A DNA stretch of 64,000 bases from Octopus sinensis. Lineage: Eukaryota. The notes beneath the pieces are model-generated. The model saw only the letters and a program-made list of their open reading frames with translations, was not told where the DNA came from and ran no database searches. The stretch spans positions 45,322,001-45,386,000 of the forward strand of contig NC_043014.1 in NCBI RefSeq assembly GCF_006345805.1. Reading direction: 5' to 3'. How positions within the stretch are numbered: position 1 is the first letter of the stretch; each line of letters begins with the position of its first letter. Position numbers and translations under genes: made by a program. Below are positions 17,069 to 63,722 of this stretch, one piece after another.

Positions 17069-17105
<37 letters not shown>

Positions 17106-25310: not shown

Positions 25311-25318
25311 TTAGCCCA

Positions 25319-25392
25319 AAGTGCCATGCAGTAGGACTGAGCCTGGAATCACGTGGGTGAGAAGCAGACTTCTTACCTCACAGCCACACCTG
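25319..25392 (-). mobile_element. SINE family A 5' fragment truncating the Gypsy element
   Basis: AAAGTGCCATGCAGTAGGACTGAGCCTGGAATCACGTGG...CACAGCCAC. Confidence 0.65.
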
Positions 25393-27920
25393 CATCATCA
25401 TTATCATCATCATCATCATCAACACATTTCAACTGTAGTACAAGACAATCACATTCCTCTAACATTCATTGCAGCTTTCAGAATCAATTCTGGTTCTGTA
25501 ATCAAGTGATTAATTCTAGCTGTAACTTAGAAAGCAAAAAAAAAAAACTGGAAACAGATATTGCAAGGCATTTCATTTGATACATAATCAATTCAATCAA
25601 TTCACCACCCTGGAATGATACTTTATTTATCGATCCCCCCCACCCTAAATAGTTCTACACACTGTATTGGGGAGGGGGCAAAGTGCAGGCAGTGAATGAC
25701 AAGCATATAAAGAATATGTTTCCAGATCCTTTTTGAAGAATGATTGAAACTAAAATTTAATTTATTTTACAAAATGCTCACATGAGTATTGAAATTAGAA
25801 GATAAAATATTTAAAACTAAAATTTAAGTTTAAAAAATGTCTAAATCTCCAAATGGCAAGTTATTGTTTAGATTGTTATAAATTATGAAATATTTTCCTC
25901 CAATTGATGTCAGTTTAATTTTTAGATTCAAAGAAAAAAATTAGACGTTCATTACATTCACTTAAAATGCATGCTAATCAAGCATAAAATGAAATGAACC
26001 AACCATTCCGATTAAACGTAATCCTGTATTCTCTAATGGATATGTTAACAGTAACATCAAACAAAATTGTATATAAAAAACAGAAAAAGAAATCAATAAA
26101 AACATTAAGAAAAAAATTAATTATAATTGATTTCAGTTTAGCTGTTTGGATTATTTTGATACACATACTAATGAAATGAAAATAGAAATGGGTGTAAAAA
26201 TATCTTAAGGAAAGGAGTCTAAAAAGAAATTCAAACAAGCTGTTGGGAAAAAAACCAAAAAAAGTATAAAGATAAACTGAAAATGTTCTATGCTAGCAAA
26301 ATCCATAAAACTGCTAATTCCTTTATTGTTAATTAGAGAACTTCATTTAAAGATATTTAAAAGCTTAACAAATAATTATGTTTTATAAGTTTTAATTACA
26401 ACTTCTCAGGTAATCAAGCAATATACTTTAGCAATTATTTGTTTTACAATTAACCATAAAGAATATATCGGATATCTACTTAAGCACTCTATTAGCCTCT
26501 ATTTTTGTTCCTGGGAAATTCTCAACATTTCTGACAAGCTTCCCAACAAAAATGCTACAAGCCATAACTTGTAAATAATTATAAAACATGTCATTAAAAA
26601 ATGCAGAAATTTGAATTAAAACATCAGTTATAATTAATGACCGGGAATCTGATATTTACCAACAATCAAAAAATATAATCAAAAAGGAAGCACCATCCCT
26701 TGTACAGGAATTGATTCAAAATCTATAAAATCTGTGCCTTTATTCTGGTTCCTCTTAGAATCATACATAACTACCAAAAAATAGCTATTTTAATAGTTAT
26801 AAAACTCGTCTATTCTAGATTCTTCCATTGCATTCTCTGGTGAATTGACCTATTGGTTAACAGTTCATCTTTGTTTACATTCATTCTGTTCATTGCTTTT
26901 ATAAAATATTTAATACAGTGAGCACGTTCAATGATTTTAGCTTATGATTAACAGTTTCTGACATTGGTATAATGCTACATTGCTTGAGAGGAAGGGTTAT
27001 AGTCAATTATACACGTACCCAATACTTGTTACTTCTTATTCCATCAAGTCTGGAAGGATGTACACTGATTTTGGCATAATTTGAATTCAGAAAGATAAAG
27101 GCTCACAACTAAATACCTATGGGTATTTTGTTGAATCTTCAGTCATTCTAATGATCTTTTCCTTTTTTTATTCCAAGGTGAACTGGCACAGTCATTACAG
27201 CATCAGACAGCATGCTTTATGCTATTTATTTCAACTCTCGGTACCCTGAGTTCAAATTCTGCCAAAGATATCTTTACTTTTCATTCTTTGAGGGTCAACA
27301 AAAATGCACCAATACCAGGTGGCAAATTGGCAGAACTGTAAAAACCTTGGACTGGATGCCTGGTAGTATTCGCTCCAGCTCTTTGCATTCTGAGTTCAAA
27401 TCTCACCAGTCCTCAGTCAAACCACCCAACCCATGCCAGCATGGAAAGCAGACGTTAAATGCCGCTGCCAATGCCAACGCCACCGACAATGACACCACCG
27501 CCACCGACGACGATGACGATTCTTTACAACATTAGTTTCATCATCATTTACTGCTAGCTATTTACTGTCTGAAAATTTCCACTAGATTTCTGCTTTAATG
27601 CATTAATTTCATTCTTTTGATTTCTTTCATATATCTTTATGCACAAGATGTGCAGTTCCCAATGGCAATGGTTACAATTTTTTACCATCTTCTTCTATAT
27701 TCAGTATCTGAAATACCATACTTTGGTATTGCCTGGACTGAGTTCCCCATTGACAGGCTGCTGGTATGTGCAATCCTAGCTAGTTTCATTTCAGTCTTCT
27801 AATTTGGATGGTCAAAGTTGTGATGTTGCTTTGGAGCAGTGGTTAGCAATGCTATACAGTTTACAGCAGACATGATGTTCAATCCCCGTAGGTGATGTTA
27901 CAGCTTTTCTCATTTCCTTA

Positions 27921-31875: not shown

Positions 31876-31892
31876 AATACACCTGTTTGTAT

Positions 31893-32304
31893 TACTCTTT
31901 TACTCTTTTACTTGTTTCAGTCATTTTGACTGCGGCCATGCTAGAGCACCGCCTTTAGTTGAGCAAAATGACCCCGGGACTTATTCTTTGTAAGCCCAGT
32001 ACTTATTCTATCGGTCTCTTTTTGCTGAACCGCTAAGTGACGGGGACATAAACACACCAGCATCGGTTGTCAAGCAATGCTAGAGGGACAAACACAGACA
32101 CACAAACATACACACATATACATATATACATACATATATATGACAGGCTTCTTTCAGTTTCCGTCTGCCAAATCCACTCACAAGGCTTTGGTCGGCCCGA
32201 GGCTATAGTAGAAGACACTTGCCCAAGATTCCATGCAGTGGGACTGAACCCGGAACCATGTGGTTGGTAAGCAAGCTACTTACCACACAGCCACTCCCAC
32301 GCCT
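31893..32304 (-). mobile_element. SINE family A, full length
   Basis: Reverse complement of family consensus. Confidence 0.92.
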
Positions 32305-33934
32305 ATATGTATATGTATTGGTAAAAAAAATTTACTGCAGAAAACTAGATTGTTTTTTCTTTTATGAAACTATACATTAATATCTCCAACCAAAATGAAT
32401 GCAGGAATAAATTCTATGGAGAAAATATCTCATTCAAATTACACTATAAATTTTGTTCCTTTGTATCAGTGAGTTCCAGCTATAGAATCACAAGGGCAGC
32501 ACCACTTGGAGTTTTCATATCCAGGTAGGAAATCAAAAGAGAATCAGCTTGATTAGATGCATGTTTTTGATTTTTTTTACCAAGTGTTGTATGATTTTTT
32601 TTTTCTTTTTCGAAGGAAAAACACAAGCGCCAAAGATACAATAGAAGCAAAAATATACCTGGTCAACTTGAAAGACTTGAAAGAAAGACATCAAAGAATA
32701 TGATTCAGAACTGACAAAAATCAATACGTAGGAAGTTAAGTATTAGTTACATAATTGAGTTATAAGCTACAACCATTTTAGTGTAACAAGTGTTAATGTT
32801 TCAATGTCTAGAGATAAAAGAGAAGAGAGATTATATAACTTTACTATTATATATTATTACATACATACACACACATACATATGATAAAAACGTGAAAAGG
32901 AACAAAACATATTCATTTCTTCTTCTAATAGTGTACAGAGGCAGTGTAGATCTGTTATATCATTTATATCAATTAATTACCAGTCTCTCGAGTTGGGTTT
33001 AGACAGAATGGTTATGTTACAAAGCAGGCATATCAAGCATCACTACGAAATTCCTCAGACTATGCTCTAAGATCCATCACATGTTCTTAATTAAACCAAA
33101 GCACAAGTTGGACATTACGTAACCGATGTACTTCTCACAGATAAAAAAAAAGTACTCAGGTGAAAGGTATTAACGAATTTGAATATGCCGAAGTCAAAAG
33201 TGGTATTGAAATTATGAGACACTGAAGAATTTTATAGAATATATATATATATATGATGCTCAGAGATTCATTTCAAGTAAAAACCAAACTAAAGTTAAAC
33301 TTTTACAAGTCTGTTGTCATGGTAACCAGTATTCATGAACATGAGTCATAAGCCAGTTTACATAACAAGCCTATAAAACAGTTTTAGCAGCTCCATATGC
33401 ATTCTATGTGGTCTATCAAGCATATTCACTATCAAGAGTCTATGACTAACACAATTACCATTAAATCAATGCTAATAAAAACAACAACGTAATTCTAATA
33501 ATATTGGACACGGGATCAAAACAGTGGAAGGCAATGTTGCGTGATAAACACTTTATGAGCAAAGTGTCAAATAAGAGTTGCAAAGTCAGTAAATTAGGAC
33601 ATAGATCTCAAGTAACCGGGGAATATATTTAAGAGGATGTGGATTAATCTTAAAAAAAAAGCAACAAGTAAGACTTGAAATAAGAACAGGAAAGAGAAGT
33701 GAAATCCTGGATTATTGATTCGAATCTTTACAATTTAATAAATAAAGTATTTATTTGTTTACAAAGTACTAATGTACTTTTAATTTTAAAGTTTTATAAA
33801 ATCTACTTATTATTTAAGCTCGACTCATTTTATCAATTTTTATTTGCTGAACTACTAAGTTATGGGCAAAAGTAACAACACATATGCACACATTTATACA
33901 TACACTCACTCACACATATATACATATACATATA

Positions 33935-34338
33935 GGCGCAGGAGTGGTTGTGTGGTAAGTAGCTTGCTTACCAACCACATGGTTCCAGGTTCAGTCCCAC
34001 TGCGTAGCACCTTGGGCAAGTGTCTTCTACTATAGCCTCGGGCCGACCAATGCCTTGTGAGTGGATTTGGTAGACGGAAACTGAAAGAAGCCTGTCATAT
34101 ATATGTATATATATATATGTGTGTGTGTTTGTGTGTCTTTGTTTGTCCCCCTAGCATTGCTTGACAACCGATGCTGGTGTGCTTACGTCCCCATCACTTA
34201 GCGGTTTGGCAAAAAGAGACCGATAGAATAAGTACTGGGCTTACAAAGAATAAGTCCTGGGGTCGATTTGCTCGACTAAAGGTGGTGCTCCAGCATGGCT
34301 GCAGTCAGATGACTGAAACAAGTAAAAGAATAAAAGAA
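33935..34338 (+). mobile_element. SINE family A, full length
   Basis: Starts GGCGCAGGAGTGG; complete body and tail. Confidence 0.92.
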
Positions 34339-34519
34339 TACATATATACATACACACAAACATATGCAAGCATGGGCAGCCCTCATTCCCCCCCCCCCCC
34401 CGCACACACACACATATTCTTCTGTACAGTTCCCATCTCCTAAATTCTACTCATTAGTATTGGTCAACTTAAGGCTATAGCAGAAACCGTTTGCTTGAAG
34501 TGCTACAGAGTGAGATTAA

Positions 34520-35373: not shown

Positions 35374-36193
35374 TATGAACATGAAACTAAATTCTACAGA
35401 TTTTTGCATATACTGTGCACAAACATGTGTACATTCAATATTGCACACAAAACTGGGGAAATGAGAAAAAAACAGAACAGATAAATTTTTTGTTCTATAC
35501 TTTTAATTCAACAATGTGTATTATAAAGGAAACACATGTAGTAAGGTTTTTAGTTTCCAGATGCTGGTTGCAAAGAGAGAGGAAAACCAGGATAACATCC
35601 TTACTATGATATAACATCCTTACTATGATGACTTTACCAAATCCTTTGTTAGAATATTTGTTAAAATACATTGCCTTTGTTTCAATTAATTTTGAAAGTA
35701 ATGAGAATTTAATAAAATAACTTTTCCATGCATAAATTAACACAGAATTCTTAAACAGGAAGTTTGTATCATAGAACCAGCGGAAGGAGAAGGCAGTCTT
35801 AGATGAATGGTATCAAACAGGGTGAAGCCAAGAATTACTTTAATTTTCTTAATATCATTAACATTATATTTCACTGACATTACATAATGTTTAAAGAAAA
35901 AAACATTTTAAATAATGTTCCAAAATCCAGATTATATGATAATTATTACAGTCTTCCATTCTCAATGGTAGAGTCATTCTTGGAGAAATGTGCATATTAG
36001 ATCAATTCCAGTACTCAACTGGTACTTGTTTATCAGCCCTGGAAGGATGGAAGGTAAAGTCAACATTGGTAGGATTTGAACTCAGAACATAAAGGCATAC
36101 ATTTCTGTTCTTGCATGAGTTAGGTGGGTCTTCACAGTCCAAATCAGATCTATTTGACATTACTGCCCTCTTAGATGCATTGATGTGTTAGAA

Positions 36194-36390: not shown

Positions 36391-37920
36391 TGTTAGAAGA
36401 CCATGTTCTGCTTGGACATTTCATTTTTGGCTTCGTTTCTATGGCTGGATACTGTTCCTAACTCTAAACAATTTACAGAGTGTACTGGGTGCATTTTATC
36501 ATGGCACTAGCACTAGGAGATGATTTGTAAATATATTATATTCCACGATATTTTGCCCAGTTCAACGAAATCAAAATTTGACATATTTTGAAGGAAAAAT
36601 GCATTTATGTTTCTCGCTCTGCCATGAGCTTAAACTTAGTTTTCAAGCTTACACATGATTTCGTGATTCACTCCTCTTGGGGAAAGAAATATAAGAGGCT
36701 CGCTCTATCAGGATTTTTAAAGAAAAAAATATAGGTATCTGTTTCCTAGTAATATAATCATTCCTTTGTGGTTTGACTAAAACTACTTAAAACAATATTT
36801 TCCAATTGTATATGATGTCACACAAAACTTTATATGATCTAACACAGAGAAAAGATGGCAGCACTCCAACAGGAACATAACTATATGGATTGAGGCCAAC
36901 AATAGAACCTACATGCAGGCATTCAAAACTGCTAGAATTAACAGCGAGATTTCTCTCAACTCAAACCTTCCTATCTTATATACATTAAGTAGTGTAATCT
37001 TGGAGATTCAGAAAGATTGGATGATCATAGCTGGAATGCTTTTGAATTTGTGCAAAAGTTCATTAGATAGACCTGTTTGATTAGTGCTTACTGGAGTCTA
37101 AATAACAACAGTAACTGTATGGTTTTAGACTAATTAAACATTATATATCTTCACATTATGCTTTTCTTAATTTATTTAATTTAACAATCATCATTTCCCC
37201 CAGTTTACAACTGAGGCATAGTGAATTTACAGAACACCCTACAGATGTACAATGTTAAACAGGAATTTTCTATACTCATAGAATTCTTAGATTCAGTAAA
37301 GGTTTGTTTTTCCCGGTCCAGAATGGTGAAAGCAGAAATGAATTCAAATGTAAAGAATAAAAAGCACTGGAGTTAGCATACAATAAACATATTATAGTGT
37401 ATTAGAAACAAGTCACACAAAATGAAAATGCTCCAACCACTAGCCCACAGATTTGCTCTTTCCCTTCTCCTCTCTGTTATAATAACTTCTGATGTTCTGA
37501 ACTAAAAAGCTGCATGCTACTTCTACCTAGGCTCTTCCACTTTCTTGCATCCTTATCCTTTTCTGGTTCACTCAACTAAATTTCACACTTAACCCACTTA
37601 TTCCTCTCTAATGATCATTAACTAGAAATTCAAGTAAAATATCAATCTTAGAATTCTGAGGATACTGCTTCCTCTAATTTAAAAAAGAAAAAAGAAAGTA
37701 ATTTTGCCTCTTAAAGGGAAGGCGGGATAAACTAATACACCAACAGCCATCTTCGCCTGTGAAACCTGAAAGAAGACAGCAAAGATCTCTCAATTCTAGG
37801 TATCCCTTATTGGGATAGAGTGTGAACCAAAGAGGTGATGAGAAGAGCCGGCATGGAGAGTTTGCAGGATGTGGTGATGAAGTGGCAGATATGGTTTACT
37901 GGCCATGTGCTATAAATACC

Positions 37921-38337
37921 TATTTCTTTACTACCCACAAGGGGCTAAACACAGAGGGGACAAACAAGGACAGACACATGGATTAAGTCGATTACATCGA
38001 CCCCAGTGCGTAACTGGTACTTAATTTATCGACCCTGAAAGGATGAAAGGCAAAGTCGACCTCAGTGGAATTTGAACTCAGAACGTAACGGCAGACGAAA
38101 TACCTATTTCTTTACTACTCACAAGGGGCTAAACACAGAGGGGACAAACAAGGACAGACAAAGGGATTTCAGTCGATTACATTGACCCCAGTGCGTAACT
38201 GGTACTTAATTTATCGACCCCGAAAGGATGAAAGGCAAAGTCGACCTCAGCGGAATTTGAACTCAGAACGTAATGGCAGACGAAATACGGTTACGCATTT
38301 CGCCCGGTGTGCTAACGATTCTGCCAGCTCGCCGCCA
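37921..38337 (-). mobile_element. SINE family B (tail type 1) with a ~184-bp internal tandem duplication (dimer-like)
   Basis: Two head-to-tail units; 16-bp direct repeat ATGTGCTATAAATACC at 37905-37920 and 38338-38353. Confidence 0.92.
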
Positions 38338-40766: not shown

Positions 40767-41189
40767 GGATCTTTTCCTTTTGAACGGCAGTTTGTAACAT
40801 AATTTCTAGGTAACTAAAAAGTTTTAAACTTCGTATACTGGTAGAATGTGTTTATAAAATATCATTTTCTCTTGGTAGTATTGAGAAAATTCTAAAGTTT
40901 GTAAGATATTTCGTCTGAAAATCCGAGCATTTCGGCAATTTTAACCAATCGACTACCTCCATTTAACTAAAATTATTTGCTGCGTCTAAAACTGAGACAT
41001 CCTGTAACTAACCCTAAACCTCCTCCTAACCCTAACCCTAAATGTTTTTTTCTTAATTGTTAAATTAATTTATTTTCCATTGCTTTAGTTTTTTTTTACA
41101 CGTGTAACAATTAAGAAAAAAAAATTTAGGGTTAGTTACAAAGTGTTTAGTTAACTAGAAATTGTCTGCCGTTCAAAAGGAAAAGATCC
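40767..41189. mobile_element. Merlin-like non-autonomous DNA transposon, variant subfamily
   Basis: TIR GGATCTTTTCCTTTTGAACGGCAG at both ends; 8-bp TSD GAAAACTA (40759-40766, 41190-41197). Confidence 0.85.
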
Positions 41190-41966
41190 GAAAACTAGAT
41201 AATGTAAGCCCGGCGGAGGTAAAAAAATATGCCCACCACCCGTTTTCGGCGTAACAAAAAGCTTAACCCTAACCCTAAACACCGAGTGTGCGTATTCTTT
41301 ACCTTTGCCATGTAGCCCTAGATTCACATTATCTGGAGAGAGAGAGAAAAAGAAAAAAAAGCGAGATAAACTCATTAGAGCGCCGAACAAAATACGACTA
41401 CGTTTCTTTACGTCCTTAATTCAAATCCTGTCAGTTTTTTTCGCCGAGGTCGATAAGGTACCAGTTAAGAACTGGAGCCGATTTAATATTCCTTTAAAGC
41501 ATCCTATATCCATATAGAAATATAATAGCAGACGCTCCATCAGTTAAATAAAATTTGTAAGTAATTTTTTCTGGTTGGTAGCAGAACCGTCTTAACAGCA
41601 TTATAGGCCCCCGAGTAAAATAATGCACTGGGGCTTCCACATACACAACCGCACCATACACAGATTATCATTGTGCCCGCTAAGCCCATGGGGCCCAGTG
41701 TGGTGTGCCTTACGAAGGCACTGGAAGGGAGACAGAAACATGCTTTATTTTAAGTAAATTGTAATGTGCGGGTGTAAAATTTATACATATTAGAAATAAC
41801 GAAAATTTAAGTCTGGAAAAATCTTTATATAATTATCTACACGTTTATTCTTTCTCAATATATCTCACGTTGTGCTCTGCTTAAATTATGAGGTTTTATT
41901 GGGTTTTAAAGGTGGATAATGCATTCACAAATACGTGTGCAGTTTCACAAACATGTATGTTTATAT

Positions 41967-42415: not shown

Positions 42416-42645
42416 AATACCTATTTCTTTATTACCCACAAGGGGCTAAACATAGAGGCGACAAACAAGGACAGACATAGGTATTAAGTCGATTACATCG
42501 ACCCCAGTGCGTAACTGGTACTTAATTTATCGACCCCAAAAGGACGAAAGGCAAAGTCGACCTCGGCGGAATTTGAACTCACAACGTAGCGACAGACAAA
42601 ATACGGCTACGCATTTCGCCCGGCGTGCTAACGTTTCTGCCACCG
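42416..42645 (-). mobile_element. SINE family B (tail type 1)
   Basis: Aligns to 38100-38337. Confidence 0.88.
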
Positions 42646-43092
42646 AACTCAATAGCATTACACAACTAAACGCTAAGCGCAGGGTTTAAAACTTATCAAA
42701 CAAATGCCCAAGACAGTACTTAACTAAAACACATGAGGGGCCCTTAGACTACAACGCATTACAATCTCAATTCCAAATGCCTTATGGGGGGGGGTAACTG
42801 AGTAGTGGATAGAAGACGCATTCGAAAGGATAAGAAGGCGTCCTAGAAGCGAATGGACAAAGCGTTCTAGATGCAAATGGAATCACCGTATTTAAAGCAT
42901 TAAGGACGCATTCCAATTTCAACAGCACATATTCAAGGCAAAAAGATGTTTAGAACATGCATTAAAGCAAGGGTTCTCGTAGCCATTCTATGTATATAAA
43001 AAAATCTTACTCTATTTTTGATAATTCAATATCATCAGGAATTATTTTTAAAAAATTAATATTTTGAGTATTGTAGAGGTAACCAATTTATT

Positions 43093-43473
43093 GCTCTTTT
43101 ACTTGTTTCAGTCATTTGACTGTGGCCATGCTGGAGCACCGCCTTTAATCGAGCAACTCGACCCCGGGACTTATTCTTTTGTAAGCCCAGTACTTATTCT
43201 ATCGGTCCCTTTTGCCGAACCGCTAAGTAACGGGGACATAAACACACCAGCATCGGTTGTCAAGCAATGCTAGGGGGACAAACACATACACACAAACACA
43301 CACACATATATATACATATATACGACGGGCTTCTAACAGTTTTCCGTCTACCAAATCCACTCACAAGGCTTTAATCGACCCGAGGCTATAGTAGAAGACA
43401 CTTGCCCAAGGTGCCACGCAGTGGGACTGAACCCGGAACCATGTGGTTGGTAAACAAGCTACTTACCACACAG
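43093..43473 (-). mobile_element. SINE family A, near full length
   Basis: Reverse complement of family consensus. Confidence 0.9.
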
Positions 43474-45084: not shown

Positions 45085-45253
45085 GGAGTGGCTGTGTGGT
45101 AAGTAGCTTGCTTACCAACCACATGGTTCCGGGTTCAGTCCCACTGCGTGGCATCTTGGGCAAGTGTCTTGTGCTATAGCCTCGGACCGACCAATGCCTT
45201 GTGAGTGGATTTGGTAAACGGAAACTGAAAGAAGCCTGTCGTATATATGTATG

Positions 45254-45284
<31 letters not shown>

Positions 45285-45475
45285 CTGTGTTTGTCCCCCT
45301 AGCATTGCTTGACAACCGATGCTGGTGTGTTTACGTCCCCGTCACTTAGCGGTTCGGCAAAAGAGACCGATAGAATAAGTACTGGGCTTACAAAGAATAA
45401 GTCCCGGGGTCGATTTGCTCGACTAAAGGCGGTGCTCCAGCATGGCCGCAGTCAAATGACTGAAATAAGTAAAAG

Positions 45476-45477
<2 letters not shown>
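45085..45477 (+). mobile_element. SINE family A, near full length
   Basis: Family consensus, followed by (TA)n. Confidence 0.92.
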
Positions 45478-46149: not shown

Positions 46150-46350
46150 ATATAATCTATAATAAAATAATCAAATCTATGTGTAATTGCAAAATGCTTA
46201 GCGGCATTTCGTCCGTCTTTACGTTCTGAGTTGAAATTCCGCCGAGGTTGACTTTGCCTTTCATTCTTTTGAGGCTGATAAGATAAGTACCAGTTCGAGC
46301 ATTGGAGCTGATGTAATCGAATCATTCCTGCTCCGAAATTGCTGGCCTTG
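46150..46350 (+). mobile_element. SINE family B (tail type 2); 3' part duplicated at 46894
   Basis: GAGTTGAAATTCC B-box, core and GCTGGCCTTGTGCCAA tail. Confidence 0.75.
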
Positions 46351-46484
46351 TGCCAATCATATGTGTAGATGCTTAAAGGCGGACGTTCGGAAAAGCAGTC
46401 ACGAATAAAATGGAATTGCTTTTTTTGTTTCAGAACTTTTTGACAGTTTATAGCATCCCACATTGCAAAAACATATATAAATTG

Positions 46485-46893
46485 GGATCTTTTCGGTTTG
46501 AACGGCATTTAAAAAAAATAATTTCCACGTAACTAAACACTTTTAAACTTCGTATACTGGTAGAATGTGTTTATAAAACATCTTTTTTCTCTTGGCTTTA
46601 TTGACAAAATTCTATGGTTTGTAAGATATTTGATGTTTTTTTCTTCAATTTCTGCAATTTCAACCAATCACTGACGTCTATTGAGGTAAAAAAAAACATT
46701 CAGTGCCGTACGAATATGTCCCTCGTTTAAGAAACAGATTGGGTTTATTTACATTTGTGAAGAAAAAAAGATACCCTTCCCCCCACCCCTAAAATAGATT
46801 GAAATGCAATAGATCGATTGTAGGATCATAATTATGGGTGACAATTTCATATGACACCGCTAGAAAAAACTGCCGTTCAAACCGAAAAGATTC
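46485..46893 (-). mobile_element. Merlin-like non-autonomous DNA transposon
   Basis: GGATCTTTTCGGTTTGAACGGCA...TGCCGTTCAAACCGAAAAGATTC; no 8-bp TSD, but flanked by a 234-bp direct duplication. Confidence 0.88.
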
Positions 46894-47113
46894 ACTTTGC
46901 CTTTCATCCTCTTGAGGTTGATAAAATAAGTACCAGTCGAGCATTGGAGTTGATGTAATCGACTCATCCCTGCTCCGAAATTGATGGCCTTGTGCCAATA
47001 TATGTGTAAATGTTTAAGGCGGACGTTCGGAAAAGCTGTCACGAATAAAATGGAATTTCTTTTTTTGTTTCAGAACTTTTCGACAGTTTATAGTATCCCA
47101 CATTGCAAAACAT

Positions 47114-47810
47114 GGATCTTTTCGGCCACACTTTTGGTGGAGGCACGGTCGACAAAATAATACCAGTAATATTCGAAGGTATATTACATAGGTTAAACCA
47201 TTACCACGGCGAAATTTAACATTATACTGAGTCAACAACAAAAAAACAACGGCAAAATATTGAACGTGTATCAATATATTTTTTCTGAAAGTTTTTATGG
47301 TTAAGCTTGCGTAGATGTGTCGGAACCTCTGTATTTAAGTAGTACTGAAATTTTTTACTGGCGTTAAAGTTGTGGCTTTGCAAGCTTGTCCATTCATGGA
47401 CCTTTTCAGTTTGAACGGCAGTTTTTTCTAGAGGTGTCATATGAAATTGTCACCCATAATTATGACCCTAGAATCGATCTATTGCATTTCAATCTGTTTT
47501 AGGGTTAGGGGTAGGGGAAAGGGTATCTTTTTTTCTTCACAAATGTAAATAAACCCAATCTGTTTCTTAAACGAGGGACATATTCATACAGCACAGAATG
47601 TTTTCACCTCAATTAGACGTCATTGATTGGTTGAAATTGCAGAAATTGAAGAAAAAAAAACAACAAATATCTTACAAAGTATAGAATTTTCTCAATAAAG
47701 CCAAGAGAAAAAGATGTTTTATAAACACATTCTACCAGTATACGAAGTTTAAAAGTGTTTAGTTACGCGGAAATTATTTTTAAAAACCGCCGTTCAAACC
47801 GAAAAGATCC
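47114..47810 (+). mobile_element. Composite Merlin-like element: 12-bp TIR stub + ~270 bp captured DNA + full unit (47398-47810)
   Basis: 8-bp TSD CAAAACAT at 47106-47113 and 47811-47818; captured part aligns to 56144-56406. Confidence 0.88.
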
Positions 47811-48430
47811 CAAAACATTTATAAATCGCGTTTTATTTTTTTAATACTTTCAAATCTGTCTTCTTCAAATGTTTCACCATTTCTTGTTCGCCCACCATGT
47901 TTGAATATGAATGTGTGAACATAAATGAGATTCGCCGGTCAATTTTTTTCTTTGCAATTTCTCTTGGTAATTTGTTGAATTGTCTAGGAAGTGGATTTTG
48001 GAAACACGCGTTGGGATCGGCAACAATAAAATATAGGCATGCAACCACATACTTATGTAATAAACTTACACACACACAACCACATTCTACTTTATTTTTT
48101 AAGCTCACTCCCCACTCAAAACTTTTGACTTTTATTCCCATTATGAACAAGTTTTCGAAGGAAGGGCATGGCTACTGACTGCTTTTTTTTTTTCGTCACT
48201 GAACGAAGTGGGTTCTGTTTAAAATATTAACTATATTCCATTCCCAGATAAGACATGTTTAATGGAAGATTTATAGGGAATGAGGGAAATGTTACCAGCA
48301 TGTTTCAGAAGTGATATCAAACAAGTTCGAAAACAGAAAACAAAAATATTTAAATCAGGTTATCACTAGTACATCAGACTTGTATAGTTTTGCTACTTTT
48401 TTGTTTTTTAGTAGGTTTGTCAATCTAGAT

Positions 48431-52216: not shown

Positions 52217-52613
52217 TCTTTATATATAAAAGTGAAATTGTGTGTCTGTCTCCTACGATTTAGATTCCTAACTACTCCCACATTTTGCGGTGCAGTTTAA
52301 CCAAAACCGGGTATCTTATAGTCGTGATTCATATCGAGCCCCTCTGGGTATTAGCGCGCGTCTACGATGAGTCTACGATTTTTTAAAAAATTTACCATCA
52401 TTTTTTCCATTTTAATACATTTTTTCGCTATTATATAAGGGAAATAACTCTCTAAAAATGTCTACGATGAGTCAACGATTTAAAAAAAAATTTACCATAA
52501 TTTTTTTCCATTTTTAATGCATTTTTTTTGCTATTTTTTTGCTATAACTCTCTAAAAATGCTTATATAGTTATTTCCCTTACAAACCCGAGCAACGCCGG
52601 GCGATACTGCTAG
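52217..52613 (+). mobile_element. Non-autonomous Helitron with a ~100-bp internal tandem duplication
   Basis: A|TC...hairpin...CTAG|T; aligns to 50492-50897. Confidence 0.9.
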
Positions 52614-55924: not shown

Positions 55925-55983
55925 AAAGTGTTTAGTTACGTGGAAATTATTTTAAAAAACTGCCGTTCAAACCGAAAGGATTC
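55925..55983 (+). mobile_element. Isolated right end of the Merlin-like element
   Basis: GTGTTTAGTTACGTGGAAATT...CTGCCGTTCAAACCGAAAGGATTC. Confidence 0.8.
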
Positions 55984-56406
55984 AAATGGAGAATAATAGG
56001 TGGTTGGTTCATCAACTTTTAGACACTATATTATGTTAACTTATTTATTTATTTACTAAACTGATAATTACAATAACATACATACATATAACATTATTCT
56101 TTACATATAAGATATAAGATATCACGCTCGGACAACTTAGCTGGCCACACTTTTGGTGGAGGGAGGGTCGACAAAATAATACCAGTAATACTCGAAGGTA
56201 TATTACATAGGACAAACCATTACCACAGCGAAATTTAACATTATACTGAGTAGAAAAAATATTTTTAAAAAACAACTATTGAACGTGTATGAATATATTT
56301 TCCTGAAAGGGTTACGTAGATGCGTCGGGACCTCTGTATTTAAAAGTAGTACCGAATTTTTTTACTGGCGTTAAAGTTGTGACTTTGCAAGCTTGTTAGA
56401 ATCCAT

Positions 56407-57002
56407 GGATCTTTTCGGTTTGAACGGCAGTTTTTTCTAGCGGTGTCATATGAAATTGTCACCCATAATTATGACCCTAGTATCGATCTATTGCATTTCA
56501 ATCTCTTTTAGGGTTAGGGGTGAGGGGAAGGATATCTTTTTTTTCTCCACAAATGTAAATAAACCCAATCTGTTTCTTAAACGAGGGACATATCCATACG
56601 GCACAGAATGTTTTTTTTTTTTTACCTCAATAGACGTCAGTGATTGGTTGAAATTGCAGAAATTGAAGAAAAAACAACAACAAATATCTTACAAAGTATA
56701 GAATTTTCTCAATAAAGCCAAGAGAAAAAGATGTTTTATAAACACATTCTACCAGTATGCGAAGTTTAAAATTTTTTAATTACGTGGAAATTATTTTTAA
56801 AAAACTGCCGTTCAAACCGAAAAGATCCAGCTATCTTTATTTGCAATAATTTGTGAATATACAACTATATCCTATAATGGTTTATAATGTTTTATAAACA
56901 CATTCTACCAGTATACGAAGTTTAAAGGGCAATCTTTCTTTAAAATTTTTTAGTTACGTGGAAATTATTTTTAAAAAACTGCCGTTCAAACCGAAAAGAT
57001 CC
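56407..57002 (+). mobile_element. Composite Merlin-like element: full unit (56407-56828) + ~60 bp spacer + second right end (~56888-57002)
   Basis: 8-bp TSD GAATCCAT at 56399-56406 and 57003-57010 flanks the composite, not the inner unit. Confidence 0.88.
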
Positions 57003-57126
57003 GAATCCATTATTATATTTTTTTCAAATGTCGAACACATCAAAATATAAACATAAACACACACACACACACATACATTAAAAGTGAAACTTAAATAGGA
57101 ATTAAATAAAATTAAAAAAGTCTTGC

Positions 57127-57486: not shown

Positions 57487-57816
57487 TGGATCGCTGAAAA
57501 CCGGATTAGCAGAATTAAATAAACGAACGTTACTAATCAAGCTCACTCACTCTATATCTGTTATTCTCGGTTATCGACAAAGAAATAAATATTAAAAAAA
57601 AACTGTCAGCCATTTTTTTTCTGTAACCGATCTGGCTTTTTTATTGAGCAGATGTTTGGATCAGAAGCGGTCCAGTCGTGACCATCCAATTTATTTTTCG
57701 GACATAGTGTATTTAGAGCAATATTGCTTAACGTATTCTTGTTATTTTTAAAGTTGTTTTTTTTAAATAACAGTATATGATTTAAGGGAGATTTAGCCAT
57801 TATTTCTAATTTCCTG

Positions 57817-58232
57817 GGATCTTTTCGGTTTGAACAGCAGTTTTTTAAAATAATTTCCACGTAACTAAACACTTTTAAACTTCGTATACTGGTAGAATGT
57901 GTTTATAAAACATCTTTTTCTCTTGGCTTTATTGAGAAAATTCTATAGTTTGTAAGATATTTGTTGTTGTTTTTTCTTCAATTTCTGCAATTTCAATCAA
58001 TCACTGACGTCTATTGAGGTAAAAAAAAAACATTCTATGCCGTATGAATATGTCCCTCGTTTAAGAAACAGATTGGGTTTATTTACATTTGTGAAGAAAA
58101 AAGATACCCTTCCCCCCACCCCTAACCCTAAAACAGATTGAAATGCAATAGATCGATACTAGGGTCATAATTATAGGTGACAATTTCATATGACACCGCT
58201 AGAAAAAACTGCCGTTCAAACCGAAAAGATCC
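57817..58232 (-). mobile_element. Merlin-like non-autonomous DNA transposon
   Basis: Both TIRs present; opposite orientation to 56407-56828; flanked by a 96/93-bp direct duplication. Confidence 0.9.
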
Positions 58233-58238
58233 ATATTT

Positions 58239-58381
58239 ATTTCTTTACTACCCACAAGGGGACAAACAAGGACAGACAAACGGATTAAGTCGATTACATC
58301 GACCCCAGTGCGTATTTGGTACTTAATTTATCGACCCCGAAAGGATGAAAGGCAAAGTCGACCTTGGCGGAATTTGAACTC
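58239..58381 (-). mobile_element. 5'-truncated SINE family B (tail type 1) inserted at the transposon end
   Basis: Core and tail align to 38100-38260; AAAAGATCCATATT is repeated on both sides. Confidence 0.8.
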
Positions 58382-58650
58382 ATCCATATTGTTTAAAAGA
58401 TCCATATTGTTTAATGTATTCTTGTTACTTTTAAATTTTTTTTTAGATAACAGTATATGATTTGAGGGAGATTTAGCCATTATTTCTAATTTCCTGGACT
58501 AATTCACAAAGAAATGAGAAATTTAATGTATTAAGAATTTATCTCATTTATTGATTTCTTTTGATATGGTATACGGAATTTTGTTGTGGGACGAAAAGAT
58601 TGAACTGAGTGGCAGAAAGACCAATTGTTGCTTGGTCCCAAAGTCAGCTG

Positions 58651-58860
58651 GGATCTTTTCGCTTTGAACGGCAGATTTTTAAAATAATTTCTTTGTAACT
58701 AAACACTTTTAAACTTTGTATACTGGTAGAATGTGTTACATAAAACAACTTTTTCTCTTGGCTTTCTTGAGAAAATTCTGTAGTGTGTAAGCTATTTATT
58801 GTTTAATTTCTTGCATTTCAGCAATTTCAACCAATCAATGATGTCTATTGAGGCGAATAC
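58651..58860 (-). mobile_element. Truncated older Merlin-like copy (one TIR)
   Basis: GGATCTTTTCGCTTTGAACGGCAG, then diverged internal sequence. Confidence 0.8.
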
Positions 58861-59186
58861 AATTTCTCCGGTTCTTTGTCAACAACATTTTCTGGCGGTG
58901 AGAGGAACAGATTTATAGTTGTGAAGGGTGGAAGTAAGGAAAGTGACAGAGTAAGAGAGTAGTCTTTCATTAAGAAGAGTATGGCAGGGAATGGTGGCAA
59001 GAGGAACGAATTAATAATAGGGTTATTGAGAAAAAGGGAGGATAGGGTTGAAAGATGATAAGATGGCCTGTGTAGGGGGAGGGTCTAAAGCTATCCTATC
59101 TTATAAGGATGAGTATCAATCAAAGGATTGAGTGAAAGGGGATGGGGAGGAACTCTGAGAGAATCACTAAATGAAGAAGTTTAGGG

Positions 59187-59548
59187 CAGTGCTTTTCAAA
59201 CTTTTTGCTGGAGCGGAACCCCAAGGAAACATTCCACTGGCTCGAGGAACCCCTGTGCAATAATTTAATAGTCTTATGCACACATATCTGCACAGGTGAA
59301 TTAAAAATTACTGCCAATTTTAGCAGTTTTGTAACTTCTTGCGGAACCCCCCCTGGACTGTACTGGCAGAACCCTAAGGTTCTGCGGAACCCCTGTGCAA
59401 TAATTTAATAGTCTTATGCACACATATCTGCACAGGTGAATTAAAAATTACTGCCAATTTTAGCAGTTTTGTAACTTCTTGCGGAACCCCCCCTGGACTG
59501 TACTGGCAGAACCCTAAGGTTCTGCGGAACCCTGGTTGAAAACCACTG
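59187..59548 (-). mobile_element. hAT MITE with a perfect 140-bp internal tandem duplication
   Basis: TSD GTTTAGGG on both sides; 59247-59386 identical to 59387-59526. Confidence 0.93.
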
Positions 59549-59730
59549 GTTTAGGGGTTCATGAGAATAAGATGAACAACAGAAGTATGTGAAGCGATGT
59601 TGAGGAGGCAAAGAAGCTGTGGGGAGAAGGCAGTGAGAGAAAATGAGGCAGAGGGTGGGTGCAGGATGGAAACTGCATCAGGTGGCACTATCAGAAAAGG
59701 CAACACCAAGAAGTGCAGAAAGTGGTTTCA

Positions 59731-59893
59731 GGCGCAGGAGTGGTTGTGTGGTAAGTAGCTTGTTTACCAACCACATGGTTCCGGGTTCAGTCCCACTGCA
59801 TGGCACCTTGGGCAAGTGTCTTCTACTATAGCCTCGGGCCGACCAAAGCCTTGTGAGTGGATTTGGTAGACGGAAACTGAAAGAAGCCCGTCG

Positions 59894-59925
<32 letters not shown>

Positions 59926-60160
59926 ATATATATATATATATATGCGTGTTTGTGTGTCTGTGTTTGTCCCCCTAGCATTGCTTGACAACCGATGCTGGTG
60001 TGTTTATGTCCCCATTACTTAGCGGTTCGGCAAAAGAGACCGATAGAATAATTACTGGGCTTACAAAAGAATAAGTCCCAGGGTCGAGTTGCTCGATTAA
60101 AAGGCGGTGCTCCAGCATGGCCGCAGTCAAATGACTGAAACAAGTAAAAGAGTAAAGAGT
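59731..60160 (+). mobile_element. SINE family A, full length
   Basis: Family consensus. Confidence 0.92.
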
Positions 60161-60746
60161 ATATAAAATAATAATCCAAACCATTCATATATCACATGCA
60201 ACAATAAAGTTTAATGTTAAAATAAATACAATTTTGATGTAGTTCATAATATTCTCTACTTCAAATTCTATTGTTTATATTTTAGCAAATGTTCATCTTA
60301 ACTACTAGAAACTATGCAAATGTATATACATTAAGATTGTGTGTATTGTAATTTTCATGTGTAATATTGTGTGATATTTCCATTTTAATGTATAATATTG
60401 TATGACATTGTAATTTTAATGTGTGATATTGTAATTTAAATGTGTAATTTCAATTCTGCGAGATGCATGTGTCACTGCTATAGCCATTACATTCAGTGGA
60501 ATACAGGAATTAAAGTAACATTGGTTCAAGAAGCGGAAAAAAAAAAAAAATTACTGAGGATTTTGTTTGACCTGACACAAATGGAAGTCCATGGAAGGTG
60601 ACATCGACCCAAATGACACCGCAGCCACAAGGCTTTCTCTCCAGGACTCTGACGATTCTACTGATATAACATGCTGGGCTAATACTTTGTCTTATCAACA
60701 TCAGAAGGATGACTTTCGCTGAATTTGAAATCAGAACGTAATGATC

Positions 60747-61150
60747 CAGAAGTGGCTGTGTGGTAAGTAGCTTGTCTACCAACCACATGGTTCCGGGTTC
60801 AGTCCCACTGCGTGGCACCTTGGGCAAGTGCCTTCTACTATAGCCTCGGGCCGACCAAAGCCTTGTGAGTGAATTTGGTAGATGGAAACTGAAAGAAGCC
60901 CGTCGTATATATGTATATATATATATATGCATGCGTGTGTTTGTGTGTCTGTGTTTGTCCCCTAGCATTGCTTGACAACCGATGCTGGTGTGTTTATGTC
61001 CCCGTTACTTAGCGGTTCAGCAAAAGAGACCGATAGAATAAGTACTGGGCTTACAAAAGAATAAGTCCCGGGGTCGAGTTGCTCGATTAAAGGCGATGCT
61101 CCAGCATGGCCGCAGTCAAATGACTGAAACAAGTAAAAGAGTAAAGAGTA
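60747..61150 (+). mobile_element. SINE family A, near full length
   Basis: Family consensus. Confidence 0.92.
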
Positions 61151-61200
61151 AAATACACAAGGTCTCTGTCCTCAACTCTAACAATGCTGAAAGTTCATAA

Positions 61201-61600
61201 GGCAAAGTAGTGGCTTTGAGGTAAGGAGCTTGCTTACCAACCACATGGTTCCAGGTTCAGTCCCACTGTGTGACACCATGAGCAAGTGTCTTCTGCTAAA
61301 GCCTCTGGCCAACCAAAGCCTTGTGAGTGGATTTGGTAGATGGAAACTGAAGGAAGCCCATCGTGTATGTGTGTACATGTGTCTGTTTGTGTGTCTGCTT
61401 GTGTGTCTGCTTGTCCCGCCACACCACCACTTGACAACTGATGTTGGTGTATCTACATCCCTGTAACTTAGCAGTTCGGCAAAAAGAGACCAATAGAAAA
61501 AGTAAGTACCAGGCTTACAAAAAATAAGTGCTGGAGTCGATTTGTTTGATTAAAGTCGGTGCCCCAGCATGGCCACAGTCAAACAACTGAAACAAGTAAA
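61201..61600 (+). mobile_element. SINE family A, older diverged copy
   Basis: Same layout, more substitutions, short internal microsatellite. Confidence 0.85.
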
Positions 61601-61899
61601 ATAACAGAATATAAATAGTCTAGTCAACAAAACTACAGCTAAGAAAACACCCAACCCATACGAAATATCAAATACCATCATCATTGTCATGGATATTCAC
61701 AGCTTAAGAAATGCCTCCCATATTGGCATTGGTCGAAGAGGTCTAGCTAATCTAGCATTTATTCTGCTCGGTTGCTTGTTATTGTCAGTATGAATTTACC
61801 AGTGATTTCATAATTCAGATGCCTGTGTGTTTTGTGTTTCACCTACGCTACACAGCTTATTCCCCTGGGACGAGGCACGCCTTCCCTTATCATTGTACA

Positions 61900-62125
61900 C
61901 ACATACAGATGTGTGTGTGTGTGTGTGCAAGTATTTATGTATGTATGTATACATACATACATACATACATATATATATACATCTGTATGTATGTATGTAT
62001 ATATATATATACACATACACACATATTTATATATGTATATATATATATATTTGTATACATACATATATTATATATACATACACACATATCTATATATATA
62101 TACATGTATCTGTATATACACACAC

Positions 62126-62174
<49 letters not shown>

Positions 62175-62268
62175 ATATATATATATATGTATGTATATAT
62201 ATATATATATACATACATACATACGCACATCTCTATCTATCTATCTATCTATCAATCTATCATCTATC

Positions 62269-62299
<31 letters not shown>

Positions 62300-62432
62300 T
62301 AACACAACACACACACATATCTATTTATCTATCTATCAATATATATTATACATTTATATATATGTATAGATATATATGTGTGTGTGTGTGTTGTTTATGT
62401 ATATATATATATGTATATATATATATCTATAT

Positions 62433-62463
<31 letters not shown>

Positions 62464-62591
62464 GTGTATATATATACATATATATACATATATACTTATA
62501 TATATAAATATATATAAATACATATATATTTATGTATATATGCATGTATGTAGATATCTATGTATATCTATCTATCTATTTATCTATCTCT

Positions 62592-62626
<35 letters not shown>

Positions 62627-63088
62627 GAGATAGATAGATAGATAAGATTGAGAGAAATAGAGAGTGTATGTGTGCAGTTGGGGGCATACAAATAGCCGCA
62701 TAAACAGAGAAAGCGAAATAGAAAAACAAAACAAACTAAGATGTCTCTAAATACCATTATATAAACATAGGCAGACTGAAAAGGTTGAGATAAAATGTTC
62801 TAAATACAGATTCTGTATGGATAAAGGTAAATAAAAGCAAAAGGTAGAATATATTTAGATGCAACAGCCTAGACCCACATACATGCACATGTGTGTATGT
62901 GTGTGTGTGTGTGTGTATGTGCCTGTGAAAGTGTGTGTTTCTGTTGTGTGCACATGCAAACCAAGATATATTAATCTAAATGTTTATATATATATATACA
63001 TATATATATATTACAACACACATATATATATATATATATATATTATATACAATATATATATACATATATATATATACAACACACACAC

Positions 63089-63119
<31 letters not shown>

Positions 63120-63163
63120 GGTATATATATAGATCGTTTAACATCCATCTTGCATGCATATAT

Positions 63164-63207
<44 letters not shown>

Positions 63208-63250
63208 TATATATATAATTATATATATATAATATATATATATACATATC

Positions 63251-63314
<64 letters not shown>

Positions 63315-63327
63315 TAAGCAATATAGG

Positions 63328-63358
<31 letters not shown>

Positions 63359-63677
63359 CAAACACACACACACACATATATATATATATATTATAATTTA
63401 ACATATATTTACAGGCCTAATGCAGCCTTCTGCTTCCCAGACCCCAGTTGAACCGTCCAACCCATGCTAGCATGGAAAGCGGACACTAAATGATCATGAT
63501 GATGATGATGATGTTCACACACACACATACATTTCATATATAGACAGACAGACAGATAGATAGATAGATAGATATACACATACACATATATATATATAGA
63601 TATATATATATATATACACATACATGTATCATCATCATCATCATTCAGCGTGATGATGATGATGATATATGTATGTG

Positions 63678-63722
<45 letters not shown>

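What the first reader, a model, noticed from the sequence alone, without database searches (positions are those of the whole stretch)
46251..47828. Transposon flanked by a 234-bp direct duplication instead of an 8-bp TSD
Seen: 46251-46484 is repeated immediately after the element (46894-47113, continuing at 47819-47828 beyond the later composite insertion). Both duplication breakpoints coincide with the TIR ends, and the copies are roughly 10% diverged by eye. Known: alternative/sister-chromatid transposition in Ac/Ds-type systems produces tandem duplications with breakpoints at TE ends. Inference: this family generates host duplications.
Basis: partly seen in the sequence, partly recalled or inferred. 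Interest (0 to 1): 0.7.

Follow-up and report, generated by a model that had tools for sequence, protein, structure and literature searches.

The report
Transposon centred in a duplicated host segment
A small non-coding cut-and-paste transposon sits exactly between two copies of a 234-bp piece of host DNA instead of its usual 8-bp duplication. A second copy 11 kb away does the same with about 96 bp, so this family seems to create short host duplications through faulty transposition or break repair.

Summary
A (46251-46484) is repeated as A' (46894-47113 plus 47819-47828) at 93% identity. A 409-bp MITE (46485-46893) fills the gap, to the base on the left and within 3 nt on the right, and has no 8-bp TSD.

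A' was later hit by a 697-bp chimeric relative (47114-47810) with a perfect 8-bp TSD, CAAAACAT. A second case was found: MITE 57817-58232 lies between a 96-bp segment and its copy. Three other family members have perfect 8-bp TSDs. None of 14 control repeats shows flank duplication.

A SINE runs unbroken across the left outer boundary, so no element ever sat or excised there. No second element starts either repeat. The maize Ac/Ds two-element signature (RET; Zhang 2013) is therefore not met, and the superfamily is unproven.

The structure fits three routes:
- a single-element hybrid-element or one-end-cleavage event using the element-free partner chromosome (preferred, about 0.45);
- one insertion with target cuts 96-234 bp apart (about 0.3);
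- other routes (small).

No outside copies or empty sites could be retrieved. I rate this a new variant of a known kind, of moderate interest.

The parts
46180..46356 (+). SINE-like dispersed repeat copy that spans the left outer boundary of the duplication (46250/46251) without interruption
   Evidence: BLASTN finds at least 9 other copies in the window. The multiple alignment shows GAGTTGAAATTCCGCCGAGGTTGACTTTGCC collinear with the family consensus, with no inserted bases at the boundary.
46251..46484 (+). A: left copy of the duplicated host segment (234 bp), ending exactly at the left TIR
46485..46893 (+). MITE1: 409-bp non-coding element with 23-bp TIRs (GGATCTTTTCGGTTTGAACGGCA / TGCCGTTCAAACCGAAAAGATTC) and no 8-bp TSD
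   Evidence: TIR scan. 93-95% identical to three other full copies.
46894..47113 (+). A' part 1: right copy of the duplicated segment; starts mid-SINE directly at the right TIR end
47106..47113 (+). 8-bp TSD (CAAAACAT), left copy, of the later chimeric element
47114..47810 (+). Later insertion, a 697-bp chimeric family member: 12-bp terminus GGATCTTTTCGG, then 272-bp segment X (47126-47397), then a complete MITE copy in reverse orientation (47398-47810)
   Evidence: The same X-MITE junction recurs at 56143-56828.
47811..47818 (+). 8-bp TSD (CAAAACAT), right copy
47819..47828 (+). A' part 2: last 10 bp of the right copy (TTATAAATCG, against ATATAAATTG in A)
57721..57816 (+). F: left copy of the second flank duplication (96 bp), ending at the left TIR of MITE4
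57817..58232 (+). MITE4: 416-bp full copy with no 8-bp TSD (ATTTCCTG versus ATATTKNT)
58233..58403 (.). Material between MITE4 and F': a later 5'-truncated SINE insertion (58243-58381, minus strand) with a roughly 14-bp TSD ATCCATATTKWTTW that includes the TIR end. It also holds an 18-bp junctional duplication, AAAGATCCATATTGTTTA, made of the last 8 nt of the TIR and the first 10 nt of F'.
58404..58496 (+). F': right copy of the second flank duplication (93 bp; 93% identity, K2P 0.070), preceded by the TIR terminus AAAGATCC
40767..41189 (+). Related subfamily element with a canonical 8-bp TSD, GAAAACTA (normal-insertion comparator)
56407..57002 (-). Full MITE (56407-56828), then 58-bp filler, then a second copy of its own terminal ~98 bp (56887-57002). 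The whole is flanked by a perfect 8-bp TSD, GAATCCAT (56399-56406 / 57003-57010).

Best explanation
The element is a MITE of a cut-and-paste family that normally makes 8-bp TSDs. The flank duplication is a by-product of the family's transposase acting abnormally on one already inserted element.

Proposed sequence of events (inferred):
1. MITE1 inserted normally at a local target hot spot at the right end of A (...ATAAATTG|).
2. While the insertion was still heterozygous, only one element end was cleaved, or the left end on one chromatid and the right end on another.
3. The freed right end was rejoined to the element-free partner copy of the same locus, 234 bp upstream of the original site. This happened either by transposase strand transfer (hybrid-element insertion, as for Drosophila P elements) or by synthesis copied from the empty homologue followed by end joining.
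4. Either route gives L-A-MITE-A'-R, with clean outer boundaries and no canonical TSD.

The same process produced the 96-bp duplication around MITE4.

Shown: the structure, the exact breakpoints, the missing TSD, the intact left outer boundary, recurrence within the family, and coeval dating. Inferred: the order of events and the use of the homologue.
For: - Both inner breakpoints fall at the TIR ends, in two independent loci with unrelated flanks.
- Neither of these two elements has an 8-bp TSD, while three relatives of similar age have perfect 8/8 TSDs. TSD decay therefore cannot explain the absence.
- The left outer boundary is collinear with the SINE consensus. This is as expected if that copy came from an element-free chromosome.
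- Flank duplication is specific to this family in the window: 2 of 5 elements against 0 of 14 controls.
- A/A' p=0.070+/-0.017 against 2 x (MITE1 to consensus) = 0.064+/-0.018.
- There are signs of break repair at this family's ends. Element 56407-57002 carries a duplicate of its own terminal ~98 bp, separated by 58 bp of filler, inside an intact TSD. That product is expected if the sister chromatid, which has the element, is the repair template.
- In both cases the irregular junction is the right one: an 18-bp templated-looking duplication in case 2, and terminus GATTC instead of GATCC in case 1.
- The family can pair non-cognate ends: chimeric element 47114-47810 moved with a 12-bp terminus plus 272 bp of foreign DNA.
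- Flanking duplications next to a retained single element are the known outcome of P-element hybrid-element insertion (Preston, Sved and Engels 1996 and Gray 2000, as cited in PMC3744419; product structure from my own derivation).
Against: - No intermediate allele (a simple insertion with an 8-bp TSD) and no empty site could be retrieved. The final structure is identical to that of a one-step insertion with widely staggered cuts.
- Two of five elements is a high share for a secondary event, although the window was picked because of this feature.
- The junction irregularities could be later mutations. GATTC also occurs in fragment 55972-55983, and the 18-bp duplication could be slippage.
- For MITE4, F/F' (0.066+/-0.027) looks older than twice the element's distance to consensus (0.024+/-0.011). 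The difference is only about 1.4 SD, and the consensus is biased toward M3/M4.
Confidence: 0.45

Rival explanations
1. One-step insertion with a very long stagger. The two 3'-OH ends of an excised MITE attacked opposite target strands 234 bp (or 96 bp) apart instead of 8 bp. Nick-primed strand-displacement synthesis then copied the interval on both sides, making in effect a 234-bp TSD.
For: - This is the simplest reading of L-A-MITE-A'-R with clean outer boundaries and no 8-bp TSD.
- The duplication age equals the insertion age for MITE1.
- Both known lengths are short.
- Long TSDs set by distant nicks are known for some retroelements (126 bp in R9, longer in Dualen; PMC9977147).
- An IS at the centre of a duplication has been seen in bacteria and is reported there as not readily explained (PMC11708052).
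Against: - I know of no precedent for eukaryotic DDE cut-and-paste transposases, whose synaptic complexes fix the stagger.
- It requires unwinding or displacing 100-230 bp.
- Transposase-made joints should be base-perfect, yet the right junction is irregular in both cases.
- It does not explain the element with its own end duplicated plus filler (56407-57002).
Confidence: 0.3
2. Two-element Ac/Ds-type alternative transposition (reversed-ends or sister-chromatid transposition).
For: - Both loci have a second family member just to the right: the inverted chimeric element inside A', and a left-end fragment at 58651-58853, 154 bp past F'.
- RET gives natural 116-1262-bp tandem duplications in maize (PMC3744419).
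Against: - RET predicts [TE-S][TE-S], with two same-orientation elements and shared TSDs. Here there is only a middle element.
- The left outer boundary is intact SINE.
- There is no t-footprint-t at the A'-R or F'-R junctions.
- The element in A' is inverted, sits 10 bp inside A', has its own perfect TSD, and is absent from A. It is therefore a later, independent insertion.
- MITE1 and MITE2 are the most divergent pair (K2P 0.073).
Confidence: 0.07
3. The events are unrelated. Either a pre-existing 234-bp tandem duplication was hit by a normal insertion at its junction, or unequal recombination occurred between flanking element copies.
For: Plain tandem duplications of 100-290-bp units are common in this window: 1676-2235, 37914-38288, 52360-52560 and 59246-59532.
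Against: - A normal insertion would leave an 8-bp TSD, and none is present in either case.
- Landing within 1 bp of the junction is about a 0.6% event, and it happened twice.
- Unequal recombination needs element copies at the outer boundaries, which are absent.
- A/A' is not older than the element.
Confidence: 0.05
4. Assembly artefact: two haplotypes, one with and one without the MITE, were stitched in tandem.
For: False local duplications at heterozygous insertions do occur in assemblies (general knowledge).
Against: - The copies differ by 7% plus indels.
- A' carries a 697-bp insertion with its own TSD, and F' is separated from its element by a later SINE. This is far beyond allelic divergence and shows a long independent history.
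Confidence: 0.03

Closest known systems
P-element hybrid element insertion (HEI) with flanking duplications in Drosophila (Gray, Tanaka and Sved 1996; Preston, Sved and Engels 1996; cited in PMC3744419)
   Same: A single retained element has a direct duplication of adjacent host DNA, with breakpoints at the element ends. It is a cut-and-paste element with an 8-bp TSD. When the target is the element-free homologue, the outer boundaries are clean.
   Different: It is known from dysgenic crosses, not from fixed genomic MITE copies. The transposase family here is unknown. No reciprocal deletion or intermediate allele was observed here.
Reversed-ends transposition tandem direct duplications of maize Ac and dhAT elements (Zhang, Zuo and Peterson 2013, PMC3744419)
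   Same: Natural short duplications (116, 147 and 1262 bp) bounded precisely by transposon ends and of similar age to the elements.
   Different: Those have two same-orientation elements, each starting a repeat, plus diagnostic TSD sharing. Here there is one element between the repeats and none at the outer edges.
[quoted passage not shown] 2024, PMC11708052)
   Same: A new element copy separates two copies of a duplicated segment, with no TSD and no flanking copies. The authors call it not readily explained.
   Different: That case is bacterial and a large-scale duplication seen in a laboratory evolution experiment. This one is eukaryotic, 96-234 bp, and ancient.
Long TSDs of non-LTR retroelements (R9 126 bp; Dualen; discussed in PMC9977147)
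   Same: The duplication length equals the distance between two target nicks, giving a direct repeat that flanks a single element.
   Different: That is target-primed reverse transcription, with no TIRs. The present family has TIRs and canonical 8-bp TSDs elsewhere.

Membership tests
MITE (non-autonomous TIR element) | Short (under 600 bp), terminal inverted repeats, multiple similar copies, no coding capacity | tested here: met
   409-422 bp; 23-bp TIRs; 4 full copies at 93-96% identity, plus a ~79%-identical subfamily copy, fragments and chimeras. Only short spurious ORFs are present. The 83-aa ORF found no homologue.
MITE (non-autonomous TIR element) | Fixed-length TSD on canonical insertions | tested here: met
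   Perfect 8-bp TSDs GAAAACTA, CAAAACAT and GAATCCAT.
hAT superfamily (Ac/Ds-type) | 8-bp TSD | tested here: met
   Three elements. However, 8-bp TSDs also occur in the P, Merlin and some MULE superfamilies (own knowledge).
hAT superfamily (Ac/Ds-type) | Short TIRs with a terminal YARNG-type motif (own knowledge of the hAT consensus) | tested here: not met
   The terminus is GGATCTTTTCGG in all copies.
hAT superfamily (Ac/Ds-type) | Autonomous partner encoding a hAT transposase (DDE/RNase-H fold with hAT dimerisation domain) | not testable with these tools
   No transposase-like ORF is evident among stop-to-stop ORFs of at least 75 aa. No outside copies were retrievable.
RET/SCT alternative-transposition tandem duplication (Zhang 2013) | Exactly two repeats, each started by a transposon copy in the same orientation | tested here: not met
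   There is only one element, between the repeats. The left boundary is intact SINE. Nothing is present at 47829 or 58497.
RET/SCT alternative-transposition tandem duplication (Zhang 2013) | First element flanked by matching 8-bp TSDs, with the middle element sharing one of them | tested here: not met
   No first element exists. The flanks ATAAATTG/ACTTTGCC and ATTTCCTG/ATATTGTT have no third copy at the outer boundaries.
Single-element hybrid-element-type flanking duplication (P-element HEI) | One retained element, a direct duplication immediately adjacent, breakpoints at the element ends, mismatched 8-mers on its two sides | tested here: met
Single-element hybrid-element-type flanking duplication (P-element HEI) | Derivation from a prior simple insertion at one of the two junctions, with a reciprocal deletion product | not testable with these tools
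   This needs other alleles or species, and none was retrievable.

The most novel reading that the evidence does not exclude
This family's transposase has a second, regular integration mode in which its two ends attack target strands about 100-250 bp apart. Insertions are then born with very long, variable TSDs, and later excision would leave plain short tandem duplications. That would make the family a direct, TE-encoded generator of the 100-300-bp tandem duplications that are common in this genome.
Probability: 0.25. Interest if true: 0.75.

Novelty: new variant of a known kind. Interest (0 to 1): 0.5.

Why it matters
Short tandem and near-tandem duplications are a major source of structural variation, and their origin is usually put down to slippage or unequal recombination. 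Here a cut-and-paste element sits precisely between the two copies at two independent loci, with no element at the outer edges.

This ties the duplication directly to transposase action on a single element. That outcome is documented experimentally for Drosophila P elements and, in a different two-element form, for maize Ac. It is rarely seen as fixed genomic copies in an animal-type genome.

If the family does this often, it offers a natural data set for separating hybrid-element events from long-stagger integration. It could also help explain the many 100-300-bp tandem duplications in this genome.

Tried and rejected
- **Outside copies or empty sites.** The exact TIR and a conserved 20-mer were scanned in metagenome and prokaryotic genome collections. 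Results were 0 hits, 0 hits, 0 hits, and one chance 23-mer inside an archaeal gene.
- **MITE-internal ORF protein search.** The 83-aa ORF was searched to pull contigs carrying copies, with no hits.
- **RT fragment search.** It found only relatives at 63% identity or less, without names, so the source species and its close relatives are not in the protein collection and the organism stays unidentified.
- **Six-frame Pfam search of 58854-63700.** The ORF listing shows nothing transposase-like.
- **Homology between the outward flanks of element ends 56828 and 58651.** This would have been an inverted-duplication signature. It is not above shuffled background.
- **A and A' as two independent SINE insertions.** Rejected: the shared sequence runs 128 bp beyond the SINE, and the two copies are 93% identical against 75-80% among SINE copies.
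- **A-MITE-A' as an LTR-like or TRIM unit.** Rejected: the same MITE occurs elsewhere with unrelated flanks and 8-bp TSDs.
- **tRNA and Rfam scans.** Nothing found.
- **Preston et al. 1996.** The paper is not held in the library.

Full report
**Setting.** The window is eukaryotic in character. It is 62% A+T, crowded with microsatellites, and carries several dispersed repeat families and a reverse-transcriptase remnant. It has no tRNA or Rfam hits. The organism could not be identified.

- BLASTN of 46251-46484 finds 46894-47110 at 92.3% identity, E=8e-87.
- A global alignment, made after removing the later element and one TSD copy, gives A=46251-46484 (234 bp) and A'=46894-47113 plus 47819-47828 (230 bp).
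- There are 16 substitutions in 229 aligned sites (93.0% identity, K2P 0.074) and 7 gap columns.
- Between the copies lies a 409-bp element (46485-46893) with 23-bp terminal inverted repeats, GGATCTTTTCGGTTTGAACGGCA and TGCCGTTCAAACCGAAAAGATTC.
- A ends at 46484, one base before the left TIR. A' begins at 46894, one base after the right TIR.
- The 8-mers on either side of the element (ATAAATTG and ACTTTGCC) do not match, so there is no ordinary TSD.

**The element family.**
- It is a MITE family. Four full copies are 93-96% identical: 46485-46893, 47398-47810 (reverse), 56407-56828 (reverse) and 57817-58232.
- There is also a related subfamily copy (40767-41189), plus end fragments at 55925-55983, 56887-57002 and 58651-58853.
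- Canonical insertions make perfect 8-bp TSDs: GAAAACTA around 40767-41189, CAAAACAT around 47114-47810 and GAATCCAT around 56407-57002.
- The family therefore behaves as a normal cut-and-paste element elsewhere. TSDs of this age are still intact, so the missing TSD at MITE1 is not decay.

**The 'later composite insertion'.**
- The element 47114-47810 is a 697-bp chimera. It consists of a 12-bp terminus (GGATCTTTTCGG), a 272-bp unrelated segment X, and a complete reversed MITE.
- It lies inside A' with its own TSD and is absent from A, so it arrived after the duplication.
- The same X-MITE junction occurs at 56143-56828. It is therefore a propagated chimeric form, and the transposase can use non-cognate end pairs.
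- Its insertion site is only 10 bp from the position in A' that corresponds to MITE1's left junction in A. This points to a local target hot spot around the palindrome ATTTATAAAT.

**A second case.**
- MITE4 (57817-58232) also lacks an 8-bp TSD.
- It lies between F (57721-57816, 96 bp) and F' (58404-58496, 93 bp), which are 93% identical (K2P 0.070).
- F ends at the left TIR.
- F' is preceded by the TIR terminus AAAGATCC. It is separated from the element proper by a later, 5'-truncated SINE insertion (58243-58381), whose roughly 14-bp TSD includes the TIR end. There is also an 18-bp junctional duplication, AAAGATCCATATTGTTTA.
- F and A are unrelated sequences, so the two events are independent.

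**Specificity.**
- The short-range direct repeats in the window were screened. Members of multi-copy families and head-to-tail arrays were set aside.
- The only pairs left are A/A' and F/F'.
- Flank-versus-flank local alignment scores are 350 and 151 for these two elements. They are 34 or below for the other three MITE-family elements, nine copies of a 420-bp repeat and five SINE copies.

**The outer boundaries.**
- The first ~106 bp of A belong to a SINE-like repeat with at least 9 other copies in the window.
- In the multiple alignment, the copy at 46180-46356 is collinear with the family consensus straight through 46250/46251 (GAGTTGAAATTCCGCCGAGGTTG|ACTTTGCC). No bases are added or lost.
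- A' begins in the middle of the SINE, directly at the TIR.
- So the ancestral state was a single L-A-R, and no element ever sat or excised at L|A.
- At the right outer boundary (47828/47829) there is no element and no repeated 8-mer. The sequence there, ATAAATCG|CGTTTTAT, is a 7/8 palindrome of uncertain meaning.

**Timing.**
- MITE1 differs from the four-copy majority consensus at 13 of 406 sites (p=0.032). Twice this, 0.064+/-0.018, equals the A/A' divergence of 0.070+/-0.017.
- The duplication is therefore about as old as the insertion.
- For MITE4 the figures are 0.024+/-0.011 against 0.066+/-0.027. This difference is not significant, and the consensus is biased toward M3/M4.

**Comparison with known mechanisms.**
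The documented Ac/dhAT tandem duplications (nine de novo, three natural of 116-1262 bp) have two same-orientation elements, each starting one repeat. The first is flanked by a TSD that the middle element shares on one side (PMC3744419).
- Neither locus here has that layout, and the SINE continuity excludes a lost element on the left.
- Unequal recombination between element copies would require three copies and is excluded for the same reason.
- A normal insertion into a pre-existing tandem duplication would have left an 8-bp TSD.
- An assembly artefact is excluded by 7% divergence and by the later insertions nested in A' and beside F'.

**What fits.** Three routes give exactly L-A-MITE-A'-R with clean outer edges.
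- (a) Hybrid-element insertion of a single element, as described for Drosophila P elements (cited in PMC3744419). By my derivation, if the left end on one chromatid and the right end on the other insert into the element-free homologue a short distance away, the product is [t...u]-TE-[t...u] with no footprint.
- (b) Cleavage at one end, synthesis copied from the empty homologue, then end joining to the element end.
- (c) A single insertion in which the two ends attack strands 96-234 bp apart.

**Preference among them.** I favour (a)/(b) at about 0.45, for three reasons.
- Element 56407-57002 carries a duplicate of its own terminal ~98 bp, separated by 58 bp of filler, inside an intact TSD. That product is expected when the template is the sister chromatid, which has the element.
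- In both flank-duplication cases the irregular junction is the right one: GATTC instead of GATCC in case 1, and an 18-bp templated-looking insert in case 2.
- The chimeric element shows that the family does use unconventional end pairs.

Route (c) stays a serious rival at about 0.3. It has analogues in long-TSD retroelements (PMC9977147) and in an IS-centred duplication in bacteria that its authors call not readily explained (PMC11708052).

**Limits.**
- All evidence comes from one 64-kb window: five elements and two cases.
- No further copies, orthologues or empty sites could be obtained.
- The superfamily is unassigned. The 8-bp TSD fits hAT, but the GG-initial terminus does not match the usual hAT motif, and no transposase gene is present.

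**Verdict.** The feature is real and recurs within the family. The specific Ac/Ds-type mechanism is not. I classify it as a new variant of a known kind, namely transposase-associated flanking duplication around a single element. Interest is moderate (0.5). It would rise if a genome-wide survey shows a regular long-TSD insertion mode.

Noticed in passing
56407-57002 (TSD 56399-56406 / 57003-57010): A full MITE is followed by 58 bp of unrelated filler and a second copy of its own terminal ~98 bp (which has an 18-bp internal insert). All of this lies inside one perfect 8-bp TSD, GAATCCAT. It looks like a break at the element end repaired by copying the sister copy and then end joining.
   Followed up: partly
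47114-47810 and 56143-56828: A chimeric family form: 12-bp terminus, 272-bp segment X, then a reversed MITE. The two X copies differ far more (K2P 0.17) than the attached MITEs (0.069). The 56-kb copy lacks the 12-bp terminus. X may be an older element hit twice at the same hot spot.
   Followed up: partly
47821-47836: The outer right boundary of the duplication reads ATAAATCG|CGTTTTAT, a 7/8 palindrome centred on the boundary. It could be a hairpin-type footprint or chance in AT-rich DNA.
   Followed up: no
46245-46250 and 57715-57720: The 6 nt just upstream of the left copy in each case (AGGTTG, AGAGCA) match the adjoining right TIR end at 4 of 6 positions. In case 1 that end is MITE1's own AGATTC (3 of 6 against consensus AGATCC); in case 2 it is AGATCC. 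This may be microhomology used in joining, but it was noticed after the fact and is weak.
   Followed up: no
1676-2235; 52360-52560; 59246-59532; 37914-38288: Plain head-to-tail duplications of 100-290-bp units with no element at the junction. One is 100% identical (140 bp x 2.05). No TIR remnants were seen at the three junctions aligned (1676-2235, 37914-38288, 59246-59532).
   Followed up: partly
e.g. 31884-32318, 33920-34350, 43091-43473, 45085-45476, 59730-60161, 60751-61159, 61209-61601, 16917-17323, 1-398: An abundant ~420-bp dispersed repeat (at least 10 copies, 77-94% identical), sometimes clustered. It was used here only as a control.
   Followed up: partly
46180-46356, 13176-13343, 8409-8583, 21562-21707, 42489-42619, 35996-36094, 37914-38288, 58243-58381: A SINE-like family of ~170 bp or more with 5'-truncated copies and roughly 14-bp TSDs. 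ARAGORN and Rfam give no tRNA or other match.
   Followed up: partly
about 22500-25600 minus strand (ORF 23774-24256); 10588-11111: A reverse-transcriptase-bearing retroelement remnant; its database relatives are 63% identical or less and carry PF00078. There is also a short ORF whose sequence looks LINE-like by eye (no search was run). Neither was examined further.
   Followed up: no
46768-46785; 40980-41030; 41260-41275; 1810-1845: Telomere-like CCCTAA/TTAGGG runs inside the MITE family and in other repeats.
   Followed up: no
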